Assembly: GCA_001643675.2 (NCBI GenBank)
Contig: LSRY02000028.1
Location: 62,001-126,000 of the forward strand
Length of the DNA stretch: 64,000 nucleotides
Source of the DNA: Monocercomonoides exilis PA203
Taxonomy: Eukaryota; Protista; Preaxostyla
Reading direction: 5' to 3'
The notes below the pieces were generated by a model. That model had not been told where the DNA came from. It did not search any database and saw nothing but the letters and a program-made list of their open reading frames with translations. The translations under genes and the position numbers were made by a program. Below are positions 15,526 through 25,247 of the stretch, piece after piece. The stretch's first letter is position 1, and every line of letters starts with the position of its first letter.

Positions 15526-18500
15526 TCAACGTTTTCCACCTCCAAATCTGGAGACTGGAGTTGCCATTGTTGTGACTTGGGTTCCCTCAGGAGCAGGCAT
15601 CCTTATCATTCCTCTGCATCTGTCGATGATATCCTCTTTGATTTTTGGGTAATCCGGGAACTTCTCCAGCACCTGTTTGCACACATCAATCGCATCCATT
15701 GATCTTCCTCCCTTCATGTAGTTGAATGCCAATCGATAGCCTAAACCAGCGTCTGTTCTCTCGCGCAGCTTCCACGCCACTTCATAGTGCTCTGCAGCTG
15801 ACACGTACGACTGCTCCCTCTCAAGCACAAGCCCAAGGAGAGAGTGCGCCTTTGCGGAAGATTTGTTCAGTGCTAAGCATCTGCCACAATACTCTTCAGC
15901 AATATCATACTTCTTTTTCTGAAATTCACAAATAATCGAAAGATAAGGTTTGTTTAAGAATTGAAAAAAAAAAAAAGAAAAAGAAAAAGAAAATAACAAA
16001 AGTTGATAAATGAACAATCAATATCAAAATTCTTTCATTCATACATCCACAAATATCTCCGATAGCATCAGATAAGCCCTTTCAAACTCCTCAAACAGCG
16101 ACGGCGTGGGAGTGATCGCAGCAATCTCCTTCAGAAGCGTCTTTGTCGTGGTCGCATCGCCTGCTCTGTTTCTGTAGTGTGCAAGTGCCAGCAGCACCGG
16201 CACTGTCTCTGAGACCGGCGCCTCTGCGGCGTGTGAGAAGCGCTCGAGCTGCTGCAGCAGGCCATCCAAATCTCGCTGTGCATCGCTCCATCCAGGCGCA
16301 GGCGCACTCGCGCCTCTTCCGCCGGCGCTGCCCGTCAGCCCACCGAAGAACGCACTCGACAGCACATAGAACTCCATCACGTCCATGTCCAGCCACCCGT
16401 TCTCGCTCGCCATCCCCTTCCGCTTCTTTGCGCCTTCTCTTTCTTCCCCTCTTTCTCCGTTCATCGACTGCTTCAGCACCTCCTTCGCCTCTCTGATCAG
16501 CGCACGGGCTGTGCCCAGCGCATCCTCCTCGTCTCGCGACAGGCGCGGCGCGGGGCGGGCAGCCGCTTCGGAAGCATTGCGCTCCAATTCGAAGTTGAGG
16601 AAGACGCGGACCATTTGAGAGACAGCTGCCACGCCCCATTCAGAGTCACGACGGCACAGGTTGAAGTGCTCAATGGCAGCTGAGTAGTTGTAGCGATATC
16701 TGAAATTTTTTAAGGACGAATATTTATTTATTTATTTATAATCGAGTTCAATAAAAATAAATGAAACATATAAGAATAAAATTAATTATCATAGAATGAT
16801 TCCTATAATTCCAATACCTTTCATAGCATCCAATGCAGAAGTGCAGCCCAGGGGCGATGCTTCCGCTGAGTTTTTTGCTTTCTCTCGTGGCGTCTTCAAT
16901 CAGCTGGGGCACATCGTCCAGTCGGCCTGCTCTGTGGAGAAGCTGAATGGTCTTGTGGAGTGCAGAGAAATGAAGAGGATTCTGCTTCAAAAGAGACAGG
17001 AAACGAGTGGAGGTGGAGGAGAATTCACGCTTTTGGAATCTGAGTTGAAATAATAGGATGAAATAAAGATAATTATAATAAAAGGAAATGATAAGGTTCA
17101 GAAAGAATACATAAAAAAGTGCAAAATCATTTGCATAGATTAGGAAAAAAAAGGAATAATCTTTTCAACCAAAAATTCTATCAAATCACACTTTATATCA
17201 GCCAGCATCAGCAGTGCCTCTTCATTATTCTGCTTCAGCCTCAGCAGATGTTCGCAGCGCTGTTCACACTCATCCAAGTTGTTCCCATCGAGTGACAGTC
17301 TTGCAAGTGACAGAAGCGCCTCTTCGTTGTTCTCTTCGTAGTTGAGCACGTCCCGCAGCATCCGAATCGCCTGCTCTTTCTCCCCTTGTAATGACAAGAT
17401 ATCTGCCTTTGCTGAACACAGCACAGCCATCACGTGCCTCTCCTGCTGCAGCAGATCCGCCCCTGTCATCATCATCATCATTCCCCCTGCCCCTCCTCCT
17501 GATGCCCCAGACACTGCCACAGGCACAGAAGACACAGAAATCGTGCGCAGATGCTCCAAAAGCGCATTCTGCTGCATCAGCGCCCTGTCGAGATCGACAA
17601 TCGCCTGCGACACGCTGTTCCCTGCGCGGTGGATGCAGCACAGCATGTACAGATCAGCCACAGAGTTCTGCGTCAGCTCCACAGAAATGTTCTCCCTTCC
17701 TCCACTTCTCCCATCTGCTTTAGACCCTTCCCCTGCAATCACCCCCGTTGATGTTCCACTTCCTCCTCTCCCACTCGCCGCCAGCTCGCGCGCCTTCTTC
17801 ATCCCGCTCACCATCACCTCCTCTGCCAATGAGTAGTTCTTCAGCTTCATCTGCAGACTCGCCAGCTCTCTTCTCAAAGGTCCCGATGCAGGGTGCTTCT
17901 GTACCACATCCTCGTAAAATGCAATGGCCTTCTTGAAATAGTGCAGCGAGATCAGAACTCGCCCGATCTTCGAGCACAGCGCTTCTTCATTCAGCCCAAT
18001 GGCACCCAGGTCTTCCTGCGCAGCAGCGGCGATGTTGTCTGCCTGGGAGACAGAAGTTGAGTGGATTCTTTGTTGCACATCGCTCATGTCATCGTCGTCT
18101 TCGCCAATGAAATCTTCATCCTCATCTTCATCGTCATCTGGATTGACTCCATCAAAGTCATCGTCCATCTCTTCCTCCACCAGCTCTTCGACTTCCTCGT
18201 CTGGCTTGTCAAAGTCATCCGAATGCACAATTCTCTTCCTCACCACCATCTGCGTCCGCTTTTGCCCTGGCAATGCAATGTGTGTGACTGCAGATACCGC
18301 TTTCCCATCTTTCCTTCTCTTCGCTCCCTCTTTCATCATCCTCCTCCCCATCCGTTCTGCCTGCTGAGCATCTGCACCACCCTGCAGTTGCTTCAGTGCT
18401 AACATCAGCGAGTCAAGTGCCTTCTCCACATCGCCCACTCGCAACAAGGCATCTCCTAACTGAACAAGTGCAGCACATGAGCCCTTTCGAGAGGAGGAGG

Positions 18501-21361
18501 CAGAAAGAGCGCGATGAACAGAGAGAAATCCTTCTCTGTTTGAAAAAAAGAATTAAAGAAATGAAGAAAGAAATTGCCAAATTAAATGAAAATCAATCTT
18601 TTTATAAAGAAGAAAAAAGAAAGAAAGAAAAGACTCATTCACACTTATCTCCCTTGTGCACGAGCAGCACGTCAGCCAGCTTCATCTGTGCCTGTCTGTA
18701 TGAAGGATTGTCCTTAGGAATCGACTGCAACAGGCCGATGCAGGACGAAATGTCGCCTTTCATCAGAAGCGCATTAGCAGTTGCCAAAGTGATGGTGATC
18801 TCTTCTGGGGTGGATTGGAGCTCCACTCGCGCTTCTTCCAAATAGCGGAAGCATTCACTCTGAATGATAAATGAGGTGTTTTTGATGAGGAAATAAGCAA
18901 ATAGCATTTTAAATAAAAAATAAAAATAAAACAAATTGGATTATTCAAAGGATAAATTGGATAAAAATATCAATTTTTAAATAAGAATCACACCCATTCC
19001 CCTTTCCTCGCATGGAAGTTCGCCAGTTCTGTGTATAGAACTGCCTTGTCAGATGCCTCCACCTGCACATCTCCTCCTTCTCTCCTCGTCTTCCCGTCGA
19101 GTGCTCCGCCCATCCCAGTCGATCTGAACCCTGCCATGTTCAGTGTCGACAGAAGCAGCTGTTTCCCTTCCTCAGCTGCTGACTGAACAGATGAAGCAGA
19201 CGCAGACGCAGAAGAAGAGGCAGAAACTCCGATTGGAGCACTCCTCAACAGCAGCTGCCCACTCAGAATGCGATACGACGGCTCATCTCTGATAGCAAAG
19301 TTGCGTGCCATCGCCTCTTCCATCCGCTGCTTGGCTCCGTCGATGTCGCCAGACTCCATCGCAATCCGCGCTAATAGCATAGATGCCTCAACAAACCCGC
19401 TCTCAATCTTTTCGCCACCAAATCCTGCTTTCCCTCCAAGTTTTCCTGCACTTTTCCCTTTCCCTCCACTTCTTCCTCCTCTTCCTCTCCCTCCTCTCAC
19501 GTCTTTCTCTTCCACATCATCCAAATCCACCTCCTCTTCCTCCAAGCACGTCAGCAGCACTTTCTGTGCCTCTGCGAACTTACCGCACAAATAGCACACT
19601 TTACCGAGTAAGAAAAGAGCGTCGCGGAATCTGGGTGCATGTGCTGTGAGCATCCGCAGCACAGCTGCCAGGCGAGAGAGAATTGGAGGCGGCGTGTTGT
19701 CCTGCGGAATGGGCTGTGAGGAAAGATGGGTGAGGATTGTGCGGGCGATGCGGATGAGGACAGCGGGATCGAGTAAAGAGAAGAACTGAGGAGATGGGGG
19801 TACAGATGAGATGGAGAAAGTGGCTGCGGAGATGTTGCTGCGGTAGTGGGAGATGTGAGGGAAGACGGGAGTCAGCTGATGTACAAGCGCTTGGTTGAGC
19901 ACATGAAGGCATTTGCTTCTGCAATTTCATAACAAAAATAACAATAATAAATTTTAATGTTTTAAATGATTGATATGAATGTCACACCTGTCTTTCTCCT
20001 TTTCCCACAGATATCTCGCATGTAAATAGAGTGGAACAGCTGCCATCTCGGACGCGTCGTGTGTGTCCAAATAGAACTGCAGCTGGTCTCCTGCGTCTTC
20101 TGTGTTGCCTTTCTCAATCATGCACCAGATCGTCCCACAAAGCGCATCCACATCGCTCGCATTTGCTTCGAGCGCCTGCGAAAATAGCGAAGACGCCCAG
20201 TTCGCATCACCCGAGTACAACGCAGCTCTGCCCATCTCATTCAGAAACGCTGCCACATTCACACCGGCGCCTGGCAGCATCGCCTGAAATGACGGCATAA
20301 GGCGCTGGCAGCCGCTCAGAATCTCCTGCAGGACGGGCTGGATGCTGTGACCGAGCGAAATCAGAGGGCGGATGATCGAGGCGAGTGTGTGTGGGGCGAG
20401 CTGGTGTGTCTGCTGGAATGCGTTGAAGAGCTCGCTGATGTAGCGGACGGTGGAGCGGTCGTTGGGCGCGTGGGTGAGGAAGTAGAGGCAGACTGTGGAG
20501 AGCGCTGGGATGCAGCTGGGGTCGTTGCGCAAGATCTCCTGTGCCTCGTCGAGCGAATGACTCCACTCAGTCACGTTCATCGAGAGGCGCATCCGCTCGA
20601 TGTAAACAGGAAGGAATGTCCGAATCTTCACACTTGCTTGTGAGAGGATGTTAGTTGCCTCGTTAAACAGCTTTTCTTTAATATAGATTTGTACCAAGCA
20701 AAGCATGGCATCTTCATTTTGCTCCCTTTCCCACATCTGCTTCAATATTTCCTGAGTATCTCCAAATAGACTCGTTCCTTCTGTTCTATTTTCACTTGCA
20801 ATGCACCATCCTTCGAGAAGGGTAGCAGCTTTCGAGGTTGGATTCTTTTGCCTCGCCTAGAAAAACAAAATAATGAAAGAAAAAATCCTTCAAGCAAGAA
20901 AACTCATTCACCTTTATTGAGTATTCCTTTGCTCTATCCAGCTTATTCAGAAGGAAACACAGCATTCCACCAAGTGCGAATGCTTCGTCATTGCACTTTG
21001 TTTCAGTTGTTCGAATTGTTTCTTCAATATCATTCATTAGCTTTTGCCCTAAAAATTTCTGTAAATTTTTTCATAAAATATTATTTTTACAACCTCTTGA
21101 TTCTGCATGTGATTGAAGCTCTTCAACAAGCAAGCAAGCAGCAAGTCTTGTTTTCTCGAAATTTGCCAATTTTATAAGCATGTTGTTTGCTTCAATGAAA
21201 ACGCCTTGCTGTGACAAAACAAAAGCCTTCCAAAAATTCAGAACTGGATCGTTTTGTCCACCTCGTGTGACCTCTTCAATCAACACATTTGCGGTTCCAT
21301 ATAATCCATTTCGCAAATAATACAAAATCTGTGCCAACTGATGTAATAATGAATCTGACAT
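15526..21361 (-). CDS. IFT139: Intraflagellar transport complex A protein IFT139/TTC21B (TPR repeats), multi-exon
   Basis: N-terminus ILYYLRNGLY...DPVLNFWKAF. C-terminus KYDIAEEYCGRCLALNKSSAKAHSLLGLVLEREQSY...GYRLAFNYMK...AIDVCKQVLEKFPDYPKIKEDIIDRCR closely parallels the TTC21B C-terminus. TPR-like helices occur throughout. Confidence 0.92.
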
Positions 21362-21664: not shown

Positions 21665-24600
21665 ATGCCTGAAAATTTCATTAAAGAAGTATGTGATAGA
21701 TTTAATGTAATTTTGCATGATTACTCAATCAAAAATTACATTTTTATTAGGGTTGGCTTAATGTTTATGCACCCGCATCTTCTTCGAGTTCAAAACAATG
21801 GACTGTTCTTAAAAATGATAGAATAGTTCATTATAAAGATGAGAAAATGGAGGTATCGTACCATTGTAGTAGAATGTGAATTTTTTTATATTTATGATTT
21901 TTTTAAGCGACCCTTATTAACAGTGCTTTTAATTGATGTGAAAGAAATTATGCTAGATCCAAAAGATGGACTCATCACATGTATTGTGAGTAAATCGTTT
22001 CATAAGATGAAAGCGAAAAACGACGAAGAAAGAGATTCATGGATGGACAATCTCACGAAGACTTGGAACAATATAGTATGTTTTTGATTGAATTGAATTG
22101 GATATATAAATGTATTGCTTTTTCAGATGAAAAATGCAACTGCAATCAGAAAAAAGCAAGAAGATGCGGCTTTGCTGATCCAAAAAACTTGGAAGGGGCA
22201 CATGACTCGTAGGCATTGGGTCCCTATCATTACGACGCACATGGCGCGATGGAAAGCAGCAGTTACAATACAACGAGCATATAGACGATATTTGAAACGT
22301 AAAAGAAATGCTCACTTTATTGATTCAGAAGGGAAAATGAGGAAAAAATTCGAGTTGATGGATCTCGTAAATGCTGTGAAAAACCATAAACAAAAGCTTC
22401 AAGTTATTGATTATGTGATGGTTTTTGAGAATTACGATAAAATGAGTTCTTCTTCCTCATCTTCATCTTCTGTGAAAAAGAAAGCGAGCTCAAAAGGAAA
22501 TGGTAACTCTGAAGGAGATGGGACAGAGAAAAAGCATGTTGAGCAAAAACTTTTAATAAAACAACGAACTCCACAGAACAAAAAAGAGGAAGAGAAAAAG
22601 AAAAAGCAATTGAAGAAGACGAGCATTGAAGACGACGATGACATTGTGGAGGACGAGTTTATGGCGAAAGGGAGGAAGCGGAAGCCAAAGAAGAAGCAAG
22701 CGCCAAAGCGAGTGAAATATGTTGTGAATGAAGCGTCTGCTGCTGAGGAAGGTGTTGCCGATCAGCTTGAGCAGAATATGGTGTATGGCGACTGGGCAGA
22801 CCTCGAAGAGGCCGAAGACGAGGAAGACGAGACGGGCGGTGGCTGCTTTGCGAGCAGACTGATATCGAGGCCTGTGGAAGAGAAGATCAAAGTGAAGGAG
22901 CTGATCTTCCAGAAGATGAAGGAAAGAGAGATTATCTTTGAGGAGCGCCTGTCGAAGGACGAGAAGAAGACGATTGTGTACATCTCAGCCACGTTCGAAG
23001 CGCTATGTGCTCAGGCAGAGGTGAAAGGGTTCAAGAAGCTGCTGAAACCAGAGTGTGTTGAAGTCGAAGGCTGCGACATGGTCGAGTTTGTGGATCATCA
23101 GCGCAATCGCTACCAGGGCATCGAAGACCAGGACTCGTTCTTCTTCCCCTCTGAGCGGAAGAAGCTTGTGCATGATATAATGACAGACATCGAGGTAATG
23201 CAGCACGAGAAGCTGGGCAAGCTGCGGTATGGCGACTATCTCATCCCACGTGCACTGGAGATGAAGTATATCGTTGCGCTATATCCTGTCCATGAAAAGG
23301 AAGTCATGGCTGCACTCCGCAAAAGCTGGCTGAAATCGGCACGTTTCCCACCGACTGAGATGATTGCGCGTTATTTCGGAGAAAAGATTGCACTGTTCTT
23401 CTGTTTTACAGGGTTTTACTCAAAATGGATGTTTGGTCTGGCTGTTATTGGCATCATTGCCTTTGTCATACAGATGATCGACAAGACGGGGCAGATCGAA
23501 GCACTTGCAGGGACCATCTTCTCGTTCATTGTGTGTGTGTGGTCGGCTCTGTTCACAAAGCACTGGAAGCGACTGGAATCGAAGAAGACATACGAGTGGA
23601 ACACATTCAATTTCAAAGAGTCCGAAAAGATACGCCCTTCATTTGAAGGGACCATCCAGCACTCGCCCATCACTGGAAAGAACGAGCGGTTTTATCCGTC
23701 CCGCCTGCGGATGATGAAGTACTTTGTGACGCTACCACTGTCAGCGCTGATGCTGCTGGCTGCGGTGGCCATCATCCTCCTCTTGACTATCTATGAGTCT
23801 GATATGCTGGCATACTTCCGCTCGCTGTCGAATGTGCCGTTTGTGGTGTTCATTTTGGAGCTGGTGCCTTCAATTCTGAATGCTATCGTGTCCATCCTGT
23901 TCTCGTACATCTACCAGTTCATGGCGGTCTCTATGAACAAGTGGGAGAACTACCGCACTCAGTCGGACTACGACAACTTCTTTGTGTACCGCATTGTCTT
24001 CTTCCGTCTGCTGAACACATATTTCTCTCTGTTCTTCCTCACGTTCGGCTTCAACCCTTTCTCAGACGATCCGGGCAGGCAGCGCTATACATCACTGCGC
24101 ACTCGTCTGATAACAATGTTCGCAATCTACTTTGTTAAGACACAGGCATCGCAGACACTGCTGCCTATGGCACTGTGGGTGCTATCGAGCATGTCCCGCT
24201 GGATGAAAAAAAGGAGCTATAAAAAGAAGAAGGCGATAGTCACACAACTGGAGAGGGAAATACAGATGGCAAAGGAAAGTGCAGAGAAGTCGAAGAAGGC
24301 GAAGAAAGGGAAGAAGAAGAAGAGTTCTTCTTCTTCTTCGTCTTCTTCATCTGCTGCTGGCAAAAAGACGAAGAAGCCAACAGCCCGCTTAATCTCTCCG
24401 AAGCAAGTGGAGAAGCTGCGCCGGTGCAAAGCAGATCTTGCAGCAGAAGAAAAGAAGATGGCGAAGATGCCAACATCGATGGAGCAAGAGATGGGGATGA
24501 AGATCTACTCGACGTTTGAGCCTTACCAAGATCTGGCAATGCAGTTCGGTTACACCACGCTTTTCTCCCCTGCTTTCCCAATTGCTCCGCTCATCTCTTT

Positions 24601-25247
24601 CATTGGCAACCAGCTTGCCCTGCGTGCCGAGGCAATCAAGCTGTGTTTTGTGTGTCAGCGGCCGATTCCGATGTCTGCTGCGAACATCGGGTCGTTCATG
24701 AATGTGCTGGAGATTCTGTCGTGGCTGTCTGTCTTAACGAACATTGGGATGATCTTCTTCCACTTTCGAGAGGAGATCTGGGCAGTGCTGATGAAGGACA
24801 CGCCGCTGACAGAGATGATGATGATGATACAGATTATCATCTTCTTCGCCATCGAGAACGTGTTTCTGCTGGTGAAAGGGCTCATTACCATTCTTATCCC
24901 AAACATCACCAACAACGTCAAAAACGCCATGAAGAAAGACGAGGTTTGTAGTTATTTTTTTCTTCTTCTTCTTCTGCTAATTTATTTATTTTCAAATTCA
25001 TTTTTTGTTTGCTTTTTTTTCTCTTTCTTTCTTTCTATTTAAAATTGTGAATTTGTGTTAAATGATGTCTGAAAAGTATGCAAGGAGAGACATATTGGCC
25101 AATTTGAAGGCGCGCGAGAGAGAAAACCGTTTGAAGGAGCAATATTGTGCAGAGCTGGCAAACTTCCGGTCGAAAGAAGAAGAGAAGAGAAAGGCAAAAG
25201 TGATTGAGCTCAAAAACCAGCTGGAGAAAAAGGATAGCGACTCCTGA
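21665..25247 (+). CDS. Anoctamin/TMEM16 family protein with N-terminal PH domain and two IQ motifs
   Basis: Spliced exons (21665-21688, 21751-21852, ~21908-22076, ~22128-24943, ~25077-25247) give MPENFIKE-GWL...LKNDRIVHYKD...KAKNDEERDSWMDNL (PH) and IQKTWKGHMTRR and IQRAYRRYLKRK (IQ). The anoctamin core follows: YFGEKIALFF, WENYRTQSDY, QFGYTTLFSPAFPIAP, QRPIP...IG. Confidence 0.9.

What the first reader, a model, noticed from the sequence alone, without database searches (positions are those of the whole stretch)
21665..25247. PH-IQ-IQ-anoctamin that appears to have lost its own Ca2+ site: a possibly rewired TMEM16 gating system
Seen: splicing three small 5' exons yields a full PH domain (IKEGWL...W), followed by two IQ motifs (~22165-22302) and a complete anoctamin core. 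By manual alignment to TMEM16A, the Ca2+ ligands are altered. TM6 NNLFE becomes TQASQ (E654-equivalent Q, ~24150). TM7 EYME becomes PYQD (E702 to P, E705 to D, ~24521-24532). TM8 NNIIEIRLD becomes GNQLALRAE (E734 to A, D738 to E, ~24605-24631). A long Lys-rich insert lies between TM6 and TM7. Known: TMEM16 channels and scramblases are gated by Ca2+ bound directly to these acidic residues, IQ motifs bind calmodulin/EF-hand proteins, and PH domains often bind phosphoinositides. Inference: Ca2+ sensing has been outsourced to calmodulin or centrin plus a lipid-sensing module, or the protein acts as a Ca2+-independent membrane-contact tether. I do not know this architecture from characterised anoctamins.
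Basis: partly seen in the sequence, partly recalled or inferred. Interest (0 to 1): 0.85.

Follow-up and report, generated by a model that had tools for sequence, protein, structure and literature searches.

The report
PH-IQ anoctamin with decayed calcium sites
An oxymonad gut flagellate (Monocercomonoides exilis) expresses a TMEM16/anoctamin membrane protein that carries an added PH domain and two calmodulin-type IQ motifs and has lost most residues that normally bind the activating calcium, so it is a natural test case for how this family works without its built-in calcium switch.

Summary
Window 21665-25247 (+) is a five-exon Monocercomonoides exilis gene. GenBank already lists it as 'putative TMEM16H' (1093 aa). 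RNA contigs join PH exons 2 and 3 to the IQ/anoctamin exon. Pfam and AlphaFold/Foldseek confirm a PH fold, two IQ motifs on one long helix, and a TMEM16K-like core.

In an alignment of 156 relatives, 133 carry E-[D/E]-E-E-D at the five orthosteric Ca2+ ligand positions. This protein has Q-P-D-A-E. Both ligands of the third Ca2+ site are also changed (K576, N1024).

A 93%-identical paralog on contig 7 shares all of this. dN/dS between the two is 0.09, so the genes are functional. The scan noted the same architecture on another piece of this genome (s1-471387).

PH-IQ-IQ-TMEM16 is shared by Blattamonas and Paratrimastix. Paratrimastix keeps every Ca2+ ligand, so the fusion came first and the sites decayed stepwise within oxymonads.

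The closest functional precedent is yeast IST2, a Ca2+-independent ER scramblase and tether that lacks three of the five ligands.

Best reading: a TMEM16H/K-type ER scramblase/tether that no longer depends on Ca2+ at the membrane site. Calmodulin gating remains possible but untested. The PH domain lacks the canonical phosphoinositide motif.

Verdict: a new variant of a known kind.

The parts
21665..21688 (+). Exon 1: start codon and the first 8 codons (start of PH strand beta1).
   Evidence: Read from the sequence. Identical to the N-terminus of P0001. The ATG and GT donor are conserved in the contig 7 paralog. The joint to exon 2 is not covered by RNA contigs.
21751..21852 (+). Exon 2: PH domain strands beta1-beta3, 34 codons.
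   Evidence: RNA joint 21852/21908 in run X3. 100% identical to the paralog, as is the following intron.
21908..22075 (+). Exon 3: the rest of the PH domain with the C-terminal helix and its invariant Trp (W87).
   Evidence: RNA joint 22075/22127 (GT..AG) in all four runs. Pfam PH 6-93. The AF2 model has 7 strands plus a helix, and Foldseek matches TAPP1, ARAP3 and DAPP1 PH domains at TM 0.83-0.88.
22127..24943 (+). Exon 4: IQ motifs, N-terminal cytosolic domain, and the anoctamin ten-helix core (residues 99-1037).
   Evidence: Open frame. Pfam Anoctamin E 1.8e-99. RNA contigs tile it.
22163..22216 (+). IQ motif 1 (residues 111-128); matches the IQxxxKGxxxRxxW form.
   Evidence: Pfam PF00612, 2 stretches, 34.6 bits against a cut-off of 20.3. 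Conserved in Blattamonas and Paratrimastix.
22256..22309 (+). IQ motif 2 (residues 142-159).
   Evidence: Pfam IQ and IQ_SCN5A_C. It lies on the same continuous helix (81-159) as IQ1 in the AF2 model.
22469..22858 (+). Charged, Ser/Lys/Glu-rich disordered insertion inside the N-terminal cytosolic domain (residues 213-342).
   Evidence: AF2 pLDDT is below 50, flanked by a confident strand at 194-199 and a domain at 346-510.
23363..24937 (+). Anoctamin/TMEM16 transmembrane domain (residues 511-1035).
   Evidence: Pfam. AF2 core pLDDT above 90. Foldseek best match is human TMEM16K, TM 0.80-0.84.
23558..23560 (+). K576: the TM2 position of the third Ca2+ site (TMEM16K E259) is occupied by Lys.
   Evidence: The alignment column is E in 128 of 156 and K in 13. 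The ligand role of E259 is stated in PMC7786149.
24137..24154 (+). TM6 Ca2+-site segment K769-T-Q-A-S-Q774: Glu ligand -> Gln, Asn -> Gln, and an oxymonad-specific Lys at a normally hydrophobic position.
   Evidence: Column 774 is E in 140 of 156. Column 769 is V/I/L in 109 of 156 and K/R in 7, including all oxymonad rows.
24188..24502 (+). Polybasic insert with a poly-Ser run between TM6 and TM7 (residues 786-890).
   Evidence: 27 K, 6 R, 10 D/E and 17 S in 105 residues. AF2 models TM6 as one helix, 748-827, then a disordered 830-846, then a helix 856-877. dN/dS against the paralog is 0.05.
24518..24532 (+). TM7 segment E896-P897-Y-Q-D900: first ligand Asp/Glu -> Pro, second ligand Glu -> Asp.
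   Evidence: phmmer alignment to TMEM16K D497/E500. The columns are D/E in 150 of 156 and E in 140 of 156.
24605..24631 (+). TM8 segment G925...A929...E933: Glu ligand -> Ala, Asp ligand -> Glu.
   Evidence: Aligned to TMEM16K E529/D533. The columns are E in 141 of 156 and D in 148 of 156.
24902..24904 (+). N1024: the TM10 'IPD' Asp of the third Ca2+ site (TMEM16K D615) is Asn.
   Evidence: The column is D in 132 of 156 and N in 4. D615 ligand role and the human D615N variant: PMC7786149.
25077..25247 (+). Exon 5: 56-residue charged C-terminal helix and the stop codon.
   Evidence: RNA contig X4 record 27 joins 24941/25075, equivalent to 24943/25077. Matches the P0001 C-terminus. AF2 helix 1027-1092.

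Best explanation
This is a functional, expressed TMEM16 protein of the intracellular TMEM16H/K (ANO8/ANO10) type. It belongs to a Preaxostyla-specific subfamily that carries an N-terminal PH domain followed by two IQ motifs on one roughly 80-residue helix.

Shown:
- In M. exilis, and in its paralog, the two orthosteric Ca2+ sites on TM6-8 have lost three of five carboxylates (Q774, P897, A929). The other two are swapped (D900, E933).
- The third site, between TM2 and TM10, has lost both carboxylates (K576, N1024).

Inferred:
- The membrane-embedded Ca2+ switch no longer works.
- The protein acts as a Ca2+-site-independent lipid scramblase and/or membrane tether of the endomembrane system, as yeast IST2 does.
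- The PH-IQ arm and the polybasic TM6-TM7 insert provide targeting, tethering or regulation.
- The oxymonad-specific K769 may take the place of Ca2+ by pairing with the remaining acidic residues, as K443 does in IST2.
For: - Family and fold: Pfam Anoctamin E 2e-99. The best solved relative is the ER scramblase TMEM16K, by sequence (3e-54) and by fold (TM 0.80-0.84).
- Placement: the tree puts the Preaxostyla clade (support 100) inside a group with metazoan ANO8 (support 98).
- Ligand loss: 133 of 156 relatives have E-[DE]-E-E-D; this gene has Q-P-D-A-E.
- Third site: K576 and N1024 against E and D in more than 80% of relatives. The ligand roles are from PMC7786149.
- Not a decaying gene: dN/dS against the paralog is 0.09 over 939 codons, and at most 0.15 in every region. 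It is transcribed and spliced.
- No other anoctamin in the genome has an intact site.
- Precedent: IST2 lacks three of five acidic residues, a Lys replaces Ca2+, and it scrambles constitutively while tethering ER to plasma membrane (PMC12618243).
- K769 sits in a V/I/L column. K/R occurs there in 7 of 156 rows, including all oxymonad rows.
Against: - No activity, localisation or binding data exist for this protein or any Preaxostyla homolog.
- Three acidic residues (E896, D900, E933) and two Gln remain near the site and might still hold one Ca2+.
- Metazoan ANO8, a proposed tether, keeps all ligands, so tethering does not require loss of the site.
- The IST2-type disordered C-terminal tail with a polybasic end is absent.
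- The M. exilis PH domain lacks the canonical phosphoinositide-binding basic residues.
- The K769 salt-bridge idea could not be checked, because the tools return no model coordinates.
Confidence: 0.5

Rival explanations
1. Outsourced Ca2+ sensing. Calmodulin, or another EF-hand protein such as centrin, sits on the two IQ motifs and transmits Ca2+ to the gate through the N-terminal cytosolic domain. The protein is still Ca2+-regulated, but indirectly.
For: - There are two above-threshold IQ motifs. The first fits the full consensus, and both are conserved in three genera.
- They lie on a continuous helix only about 30 residues upstream of the first strand of the N-terminal domain.
- The IQ region is under purifying selection (omega 0.15).
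- The genome encodes a canonical calmodulin and a centrin.
- The order of events fits relaxed constraint after a second sensor was in place: IQ first, in Paratrimastix with an intact site, then ligand loss.
Against: - IQ motifs typically hold apo-calmodulin or light chains constitutively, and often serve as rigid lever or spacer elements.
- No TMEM16 is known to be gated through calmodulin. The claims for TMEM16A are disputed (PMC4076522, PMC8471323).
- The predicted IQ-calmodulin complex gave no verdict.
Confidence: 0.2
2. A residual direct Ca2+ site. The remaining E896, D900 and E933, with the Q771/Q774 side-chain oxygens, still bind one Ca2+ with altered affinity. The protein stays a directly Ca2+-gated TMEM16.
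For: - Two ligand positions keep a carboxylate (D900, E933), and the neighbouring E896 is retained.
- Gln can coordinate Ca2+.
- The TM7-10 region is strongly conserved between the paralogs (omega 0.06).
Against: - Established mutagenesis of TMEM16A, TMEM16F and nhTMEM16 shows that single neutralisations of these carboxylates cut Ca2+ sensitivity by orders of magnitude (family knowledge; reviewed in PMC8640346).
- Here three are gone, one replaced by a helix-breaking Pro, and a Lys has been added on TM6.
- The pattern differs among oxymonads (S-D-E-Q-D, Q-P-D-A-E, H-Q-D-D-A). That looks like relaxed constraint, not a new conserved site.
Confidence: 0.15
3. A non-transporting scaffold. The TMEM16 core serves only as a dimeric membrane anchor for the PH-IQ arm and the polybasic insert, for example as a pure tether or a platform for cytoskeletal or flagellar proteins. 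It has no scrambling or channel activity.
For: - Ca2+ activation is lost.
- Large cytosolic additions are present.
- ANO8 has been described mainly as a tether (title cited).
Against: - The transmembrane core is the most constrained part (omega 0.06-0.07).
- It models confidently as a complete TMEM16K-like fold.
- IST2, once regarded as a mere tether, proved to be an active scramblase.
Confidence: 0.12

Closest known systems
Metazoan TMEM16H/ANO8 and TMEM16K/ANO10 (intracellular, ER-resident TMEM16 proteins)
   Same: - Closest named sequences are ANO8 from molluscs, insects and fish.
- It falls in the same supported tree group.
- The best solved structure by sequence and by fold is TMEM16K.
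- It has the long TM6-TM7 loop seen in ANO8.
   Different: - ANO8 and ANO10 keep all five orthosteric carboxylates and the third-site pair. They have no PH domain and no IQ motifs.
- The insert here is strongly basic, while the ANO8 inserts are acidic.
Yeast IST2 (TMEM16-like ER-plasma membrane tether and constitutive scramblase; PDB 9hhe; PMC12618243)
   Same: - Three of five conserved acidic Ca2+ ligands are substituted.
- It is Ca2+-independent by design.
- An extra membrane-targeting appendage is attached to a TMEM16 core.
- It may use the same trick of a Lys replacing Ca2+.
   Different: - This is an independent loss in a distant clade. phmmer to IST2 gives only E 5.5e-4, on the TM7-8 region.
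- IST2 substitutes TM7/TM8 residues and keeps the TM6 Glu. Here the TM6 Glu is lost.
- The IST2 appendage is a long disordered C-terminal tail with a polybasic end and an Osh6 site. Here it is an N-terminal PH domain on an IQ helix plus a polybasic TM6-TM7 insert.
Preaxostyla orthologs: Paratrimastix pyriformis KAJ4460598.1 (P0012), Blattamonas nauphoetae (P0002), Streblomastix strix KAA6362637.1 (P0011, fragment)
   Same: - The PH-IQ-IQ-TMEM16 layout is the same.
- They form one clade with support 100.
   Different: - Paratrimastix keeps E-D-E-E-D and the third-site E/D.
- Streblomastix has S-D-E-Q-D.
- Blattamonas has H-Q-D-D-A, with third site K/D.
- The PH basic motif is near-complete in Paratrimastix, partial in Blattamonas and absent in M. 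exilis.
Other TMEM16 proteins with lipid-binding N-terminal modules or degenerate sites
   Same: - A Paulinella micropora protein has two C2 domains in front of the anoctamin core.
- A metagenomic protein, P0106, has a sub-threshold PH-like N-terminus.
- The oomycete Lagenidium P0139 has Q-D-D-G-T at the ligand positions.
   Different: - They are in different clades.
- None combines an above-threshold PH domain, IQ motifs and loss of the Ca2+ site.

Membership tests
TMEM16/anoctamin (PF04547) | Full-length match to the family profile. | tested here: met
   334 bits, E 2e-99, profile positions 1-459 of 460.
TMEM16/anoctamin (PF04547) | Ten-helix fold with an N-terminal cytosolic domain. | tested here: met
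   AF2 core pLDDT above 90. Foldseek to TMEM16K, TMEM16F, nhTMEM16 and TMEM16A: probability 1.00, TM up to 0.84.
TMEM16/anoctamin (PF04547) | Five conserved acidic residues on TM6-8 forming the two-Ca2+ site. | tested here: not met
   Q774, P897, D900, A929 and E933, against E-[DE]-E-E-D in 133 of 156 relatives.
TMEM16/anoctamin (PF04547) | Third Ca2+ site carboxylates on TM2 and TM10 (TMEM16K E259 and D615). | tested here: not met
   K576 and N1024. Ligand roles from PMC7786149.
TMEM16H/K (ANO8/ANO10) subgroup | Groups with ANO8/ANO10 rather than with plasma-membrane ANO1-7 in a tree. | tested here: met
   SH-aLRT 98 for the 28-row group holding ANO8 and the Preaxostyla clade, with ANO4 as outgroup. 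This was a quick LG+G4 search. Orthology to ANO8 specifically is not resolved.
PH domain (PF00169) | Profile match above the curated cut-off, and a seven-strand sandwich capped by a C-terminal helix with the invariant Trp. | tested here: met
   26.4 and 33.2 bits against a cut-off of 25.1. AF2 pLDDT is about 90 in the domain. Foldseek TM 0.83-0.88 to TAPP1, ARAP3 and DAPP1.
Phosphoinositide-binding PH domains | Basic signature: Lys at the end of beta1 and [K/R]-x-R before the aromatic residue of beta2. | tested here: not met
   M. exilis has N-V-Y and S-K-Q-W at these places. Paratrimastix has K and K-K-K-W. The motif definition is from general knowledge of PH domains.
IQ calmodulin-binding motif (PF00612) | Match to IQxxx[RK]Gxxx[RK] on a helix. 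| tested here: met
   Two stretches, 34.6 bits against a cut-off of 20.3. Continuous helix 81-159.
IQ calmodulin-binding motif (PF00612) | Binds calmodulin or a related light chain. | tested here: inconclusive
   Complex prediction of residues 100-168 with the exon-2 part of M. exilis calmodulin scored 0.10. The tool gave no verdict.
IST2-like constitutive scramblase-tether | Ca2+ site replaced so that the open state is Ca2+-independent. | tested here: inconclusive
   Ligand loss is shown. A replacing Lys (K769) is only a candidate. Activity is not testable here.
IST2-like constitutive scramblase-tether | Long disordered C-terminal linker ending in a polybasic plasma-membrane-binding sequence; orthology to IST2. 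| tested here: not met
   The C-terminus is a 56-residue helix. IST2 is only a marginal sequence hit. The resemblance is functional analogy, not membership.

The most novel reading that the evidence does not exclude
The Preaxostyla PH-IQ-IQ-TMEM16 proteins may be the first TMEM16s gated through an IQ-bound EF-hand protein. The series Paratrimastix (all ligands), Streblomastix (3 of 5), then Monocercomonoides and Blattamonas (2 of 5, third site gone) would record, step by step, the hand-over of Ca2+ sensing from the membrane-embedded site to calmodulin. A Lys (K769) would lock the old site.
Probability: 0.2. Interest if true: 0.8.

Novelty: new variant of a known kind. Interest (0 to 1): 0.55.

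Why it matters
TMEM16 gating is understood almost entirely through the TM6-8 Ca2+ site. The only characterised member without that site is yeast IST2.

This lineage offers a second, independent loss. It comes with graded intermediates in living relatives, and with calmodulin-type motifs built into the protein. Two questions become directly testable by reconstitution of four orthologs:
- What keeps a scramblase groove open without Ca2+?
- Can a TMEM16 be controlled through calmodulin at all? This is a long-disputed point for TMEM16A.

It also bears on endomembrane lipid handling in oxymonads, the eukaryotes without mitochondria. M. exilis has only these two near-identical TMEM16 genes.

Tried and rejected
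- Complex prediction. Residues 100-168 were paired with the exon-2-encoded part of M. exilis calmodulin (L005:1363-1701). The score was 0.10, and the tool states this is no evidence either way.
- PH exons scanned alone by reference gave no Pfam hit. The PH domain is only recognisable in the spliced product.
- Pseudogene or annotation artefact: rejected. dN/dS is 0.09 and the transcripts are spliced.
- A hidden canonical anoctamin elsewhere in the genome: rejected. The own-genome search finds only this gene, its paralog and a low-complexity false hit.
- The RNA 'joints' 22470/24325 and similar are rejected as splicing. They link the two poly-Ser coding repeats and have short sides of 21-24 nt.
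- The first tree run, with the mixture model, did not finish. The LG+G4 quick tree was used instead.
- Literature searches for PH plus anoctamin, or for Monocercomonoides plus TMEM16, found no description.
- Architecture survey limit. Only the 150 best of 7446 hits were inspected, and only those with an N-terminal extension of at least about 165 residues were scanned. PH-TMEM16 fusions in more distant lineages are therefore not excluded.
Full report
**What is there**

The window is from Monocercomonoides exilis, contig 23 of the assembly. Reading the sequence gives a five-exon gene on the + strand:

| Exon | Coordinates |
|---|---|
| 1 | 21665-21688 |
| 2 | 21751-21852 |
| 3 | 21908-22075 |
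| 4 | 22127-24943 |
| 5 | 25077-25247 |

- All introns are GT..AG and 51-133 nt long.
Exons were searched by reference.
- For whole-protein work I used the public record returned by the search: P0001, 1093 aa, 'putative Transmembrane protein 16H'. It is identical to the exon-by-exon translation.

**Transcript evidence**

Four RNA runs from one study, held as contigs, cover the gene.
- The PH-exon-3 to IQ-exon joint (22075/22127) is in contigs of all four runs.
- The exon 2/3 joint (21852/21908) is in one run.
- The exon 4/5 joint is in one contig.
- The exon 1/2 joint is not covered. It rests on three things: conservation of the ATG and splice sites in the paralog, the GenBank model, and the fact that PH strand beta1 runs across it.
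- Other 'joints' link the two poly-Ser repeats and are assembly artefacts.

**Domains**

- Pfam finds PH (6-93), two IQ motifs (111-128 and 142-159) and Anoctamin (511-1035, E 2e-99), all above the curated cut-offs.
- An AlphaFold2 model of residues 1-190 has mean pLDDT 81, and about 90 in the PH part. It shows seven strands and a C-terminal helix that continues unbroken through both IQ motifs to residue 159.
- Foldseek matches that model to the TAPP1, ARAP3, DAPP1 and AKT PH domains at TM 0.83-0.88.
- The full-length model has a confident core, pLDDT above 90 from residue 346.
  - TM6 is one helix from 748 to 827, running out into the Lys-rich insert.
  - The poly-Ser run is disordered.
  - The C-terminal helix is long.
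  - The charged stretch 213-342 is a disordered insertion inside the N-terminal cytosolic domain. The first strand of that domain is at 194-199.
  - The PH-IQ helix is therefore attached close to the core.
- The best structural matches are human TMEM16K entries, TM 0.80-0.84.

**Ca2+ sites**

phmmer aligns TM7-8 to TMEM16K so that D497, E500, E529 and D533 face P897, D900, A929 and E933. A MAFFT alignment of the 156 nearest TMEM16 sequences gives the same result and adds TM6, where the Glu column (E in 140 of 156) holds Q774.

| Sequence(s) | Residues at the five orthosteric ligand positions |
|---|---|
| 133 of 156 relatives | E-[D/E]-E-E-D |
| M. exilis and its paralog | Q-P-D-A-E |

- This does not hinge on the alignment. 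The TM6 stretch has no acidic residue at all.
Its ligands in TMEM16K are E259 and D615 (PMC7786149). It is also gone: K576 and N1024.
- N1024 is the same change as the human D615N ataxia variant discussed in that paper.
- An oxymonad-specific Lys (K769) sits in a TM6 column that is V/I/L in 109 of 156 sequences.

**Is it a live gene?**

- The genome has only one other anoctamin locus, on contig 7, plus one low-complexity false hit.
- That copy has the same PH exons, IQ motifs and substituted ligands.
- Over the 939 codons of exon 4 the two are 92.8% identical, with dS 0.43 and dN/dS 0.09. Every region is at or below 0.15. TM7-10 is at 0.06 and the polybasic insert at 0.05.
- The altered protein is therefore maintained by selection, and M. 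exilis has no canonical TMEM16.
- The scan had already noted the same architecture on another piece of this genome (s1-471387).

**Relatives and order of events**

A HMMER search of 1.84 billion representatives returns, in order:
- Blattamonas nauphoetae;
- an oomycete tandem fusion;
- a Streblomastix strix fragment;
- Paratrimastix pyriformis;
- then metazoan ANO8.

Blattamonas and Paratrimastix have the same PH-IQ-IQ N-terminus.

A tree puts the four Preaxostyla sequences in one clade (support 100), with the oxymonads inside it (support 100). That clade sits within a group that contains ANO8 (support 98).

Ligand patterns:

| Organism | Orthosteric positions | Third site |
|---|---|---|
| Paratrimastix | E-D-E-E-D | E/D |
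| Streblomastix | S-D-E-Q-D | region absent from the 509-aa fragment |
| Monocercomonoides | Q-P-D-A-E | K/N |
| Blattamonas | H-Q-D-D-A | K/D |

So the PH-IQ fusion arose before the sites decayed. The decay happened within oxymonads, along different paths in each lineage. That pattern is what relaxed constraint on Ca2+ binding would produce.

**The PH domain**

Compared with phosphoinositide-binding PH domains, M. exilis lacks the beta1 Lys and the basic pair before the beta2 aromatic residue.

| Organism | beta1 | beta2 |
|---|---|---|
| M. exilis | N-V-Y | S-K-Q-W |
| Blattamonas | partial motif | partial motif |
| Paratrimastix | K | K-K-K-W |

A specific lipid-sensing role in M. exilis is therefore doubtful. 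General membrane or protein binding is as likely.

**Comparison with what is known**

- Yeast IST2 is the only characterised TMEM16 homolog without the Ca2+ site. Three of its five acidic residues are substituted, and K443 replaces Ca2+ through a salt bridge. It scrambles lipids constitutively and tethers the ER to the plasma membrane through an added appendage (PMC12618243).
- The M. exilis protein is not an IST2 ortholog, but it repeats the theme by different means.
- Lipid-binding modules fused to TMEM16 recur elsewhere: two C2 domains in Paulinella, and a sub-threshold PH-like region in one metagenomic protein.
- Degenerate sites occur in a few other lineages, such as Lagenidium.
- Among the 150 nearest representatives, only Preaxostyla combine an above-threshold PH domain with the anoctamin core.
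- No paper in the searchable library describes this architecture or any Monocercomonoides TMEM16.

**Mechanism**

- Shown: the family, fold, architecture, expression, selection, loss of ligands, and phylogenetic order.
- Inferred: the membrane Ca2+ switch is inactive, and the protein works as a Ca2+-site-independent endomembrane scramblase and/or tether. The PH-IQ arm is an 80-residue helix, about 12 nm long if straight and stiffened by light chains. That arm and the polybasic TM6-TM7 insert act as targeting or regulatory elements.
- Calmodulin-mediated gating is the most interesting alternative. The order of events allows it, but nothing here tests it. The single complex prediction gave no verdict.

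**Verdict**

- This is a new variant of a known kind: it is already in GenBank as a 'putative TMEM16H', but it is undescribed.

Noticed in passing
window 21665-25247 versus G000:C7:225655-232200 (L001, L004): The gene lies in a segmental duplication. The contig 7 copy includes the upstream intergenic region and the first exon of the divergent TTC21/IFT139 neighbour. Exon 2 and the following intron are 100% identical between the copies, while exon 4 has dS 0.43. This suggests a recent gene-conversion tract over the PH exons.
   Followed up: partly
window 17140-21361 (-): The divergently transcribed upstream neighbour is a multi-exon TTC21 (IFT139) intraflagellar-transport gene. Pfam ARM_TT21_N, ARM_TT21_2nd and ARM_TT21_4th domains are found.
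   Followed up: partly
window 22447-22471 and 24325-24349: Two poly-Ser coding repeats (TCT/TCA runs) in the same gene make short-read RNA assemblies jump between them and to other loci. This produces false 'joints' of about 1.85 kb.
   Followed up: yes
G000:C56:154240-154770 (L005) and G000:C10:240639-241063 (L007): There is a canonical calmodulin gene, two exons with the intron after about codon 26, and a multi-exon centrin gene. Both are candidate IQ partners.
   Followed up: partly
P0139 (Lagenidium giganteum) and P0126 (Pythium oligandrum): Oomycete TMEM16 proteins with long N-terminal extensions also have a Gln in place of the TM6 Glu. In Lagenidium the TM8 ligands are G and T. This is another independent decay of the Ca2+ site.
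   Followed up: no
P0012 (Paratrimastix pyriformis KAJ4460598.1): The public model lacks the conserved segment after TM8 (the QRPxP...IG stretch). The likely cause is a mis-called intron in the annotation.
   Followed up: no
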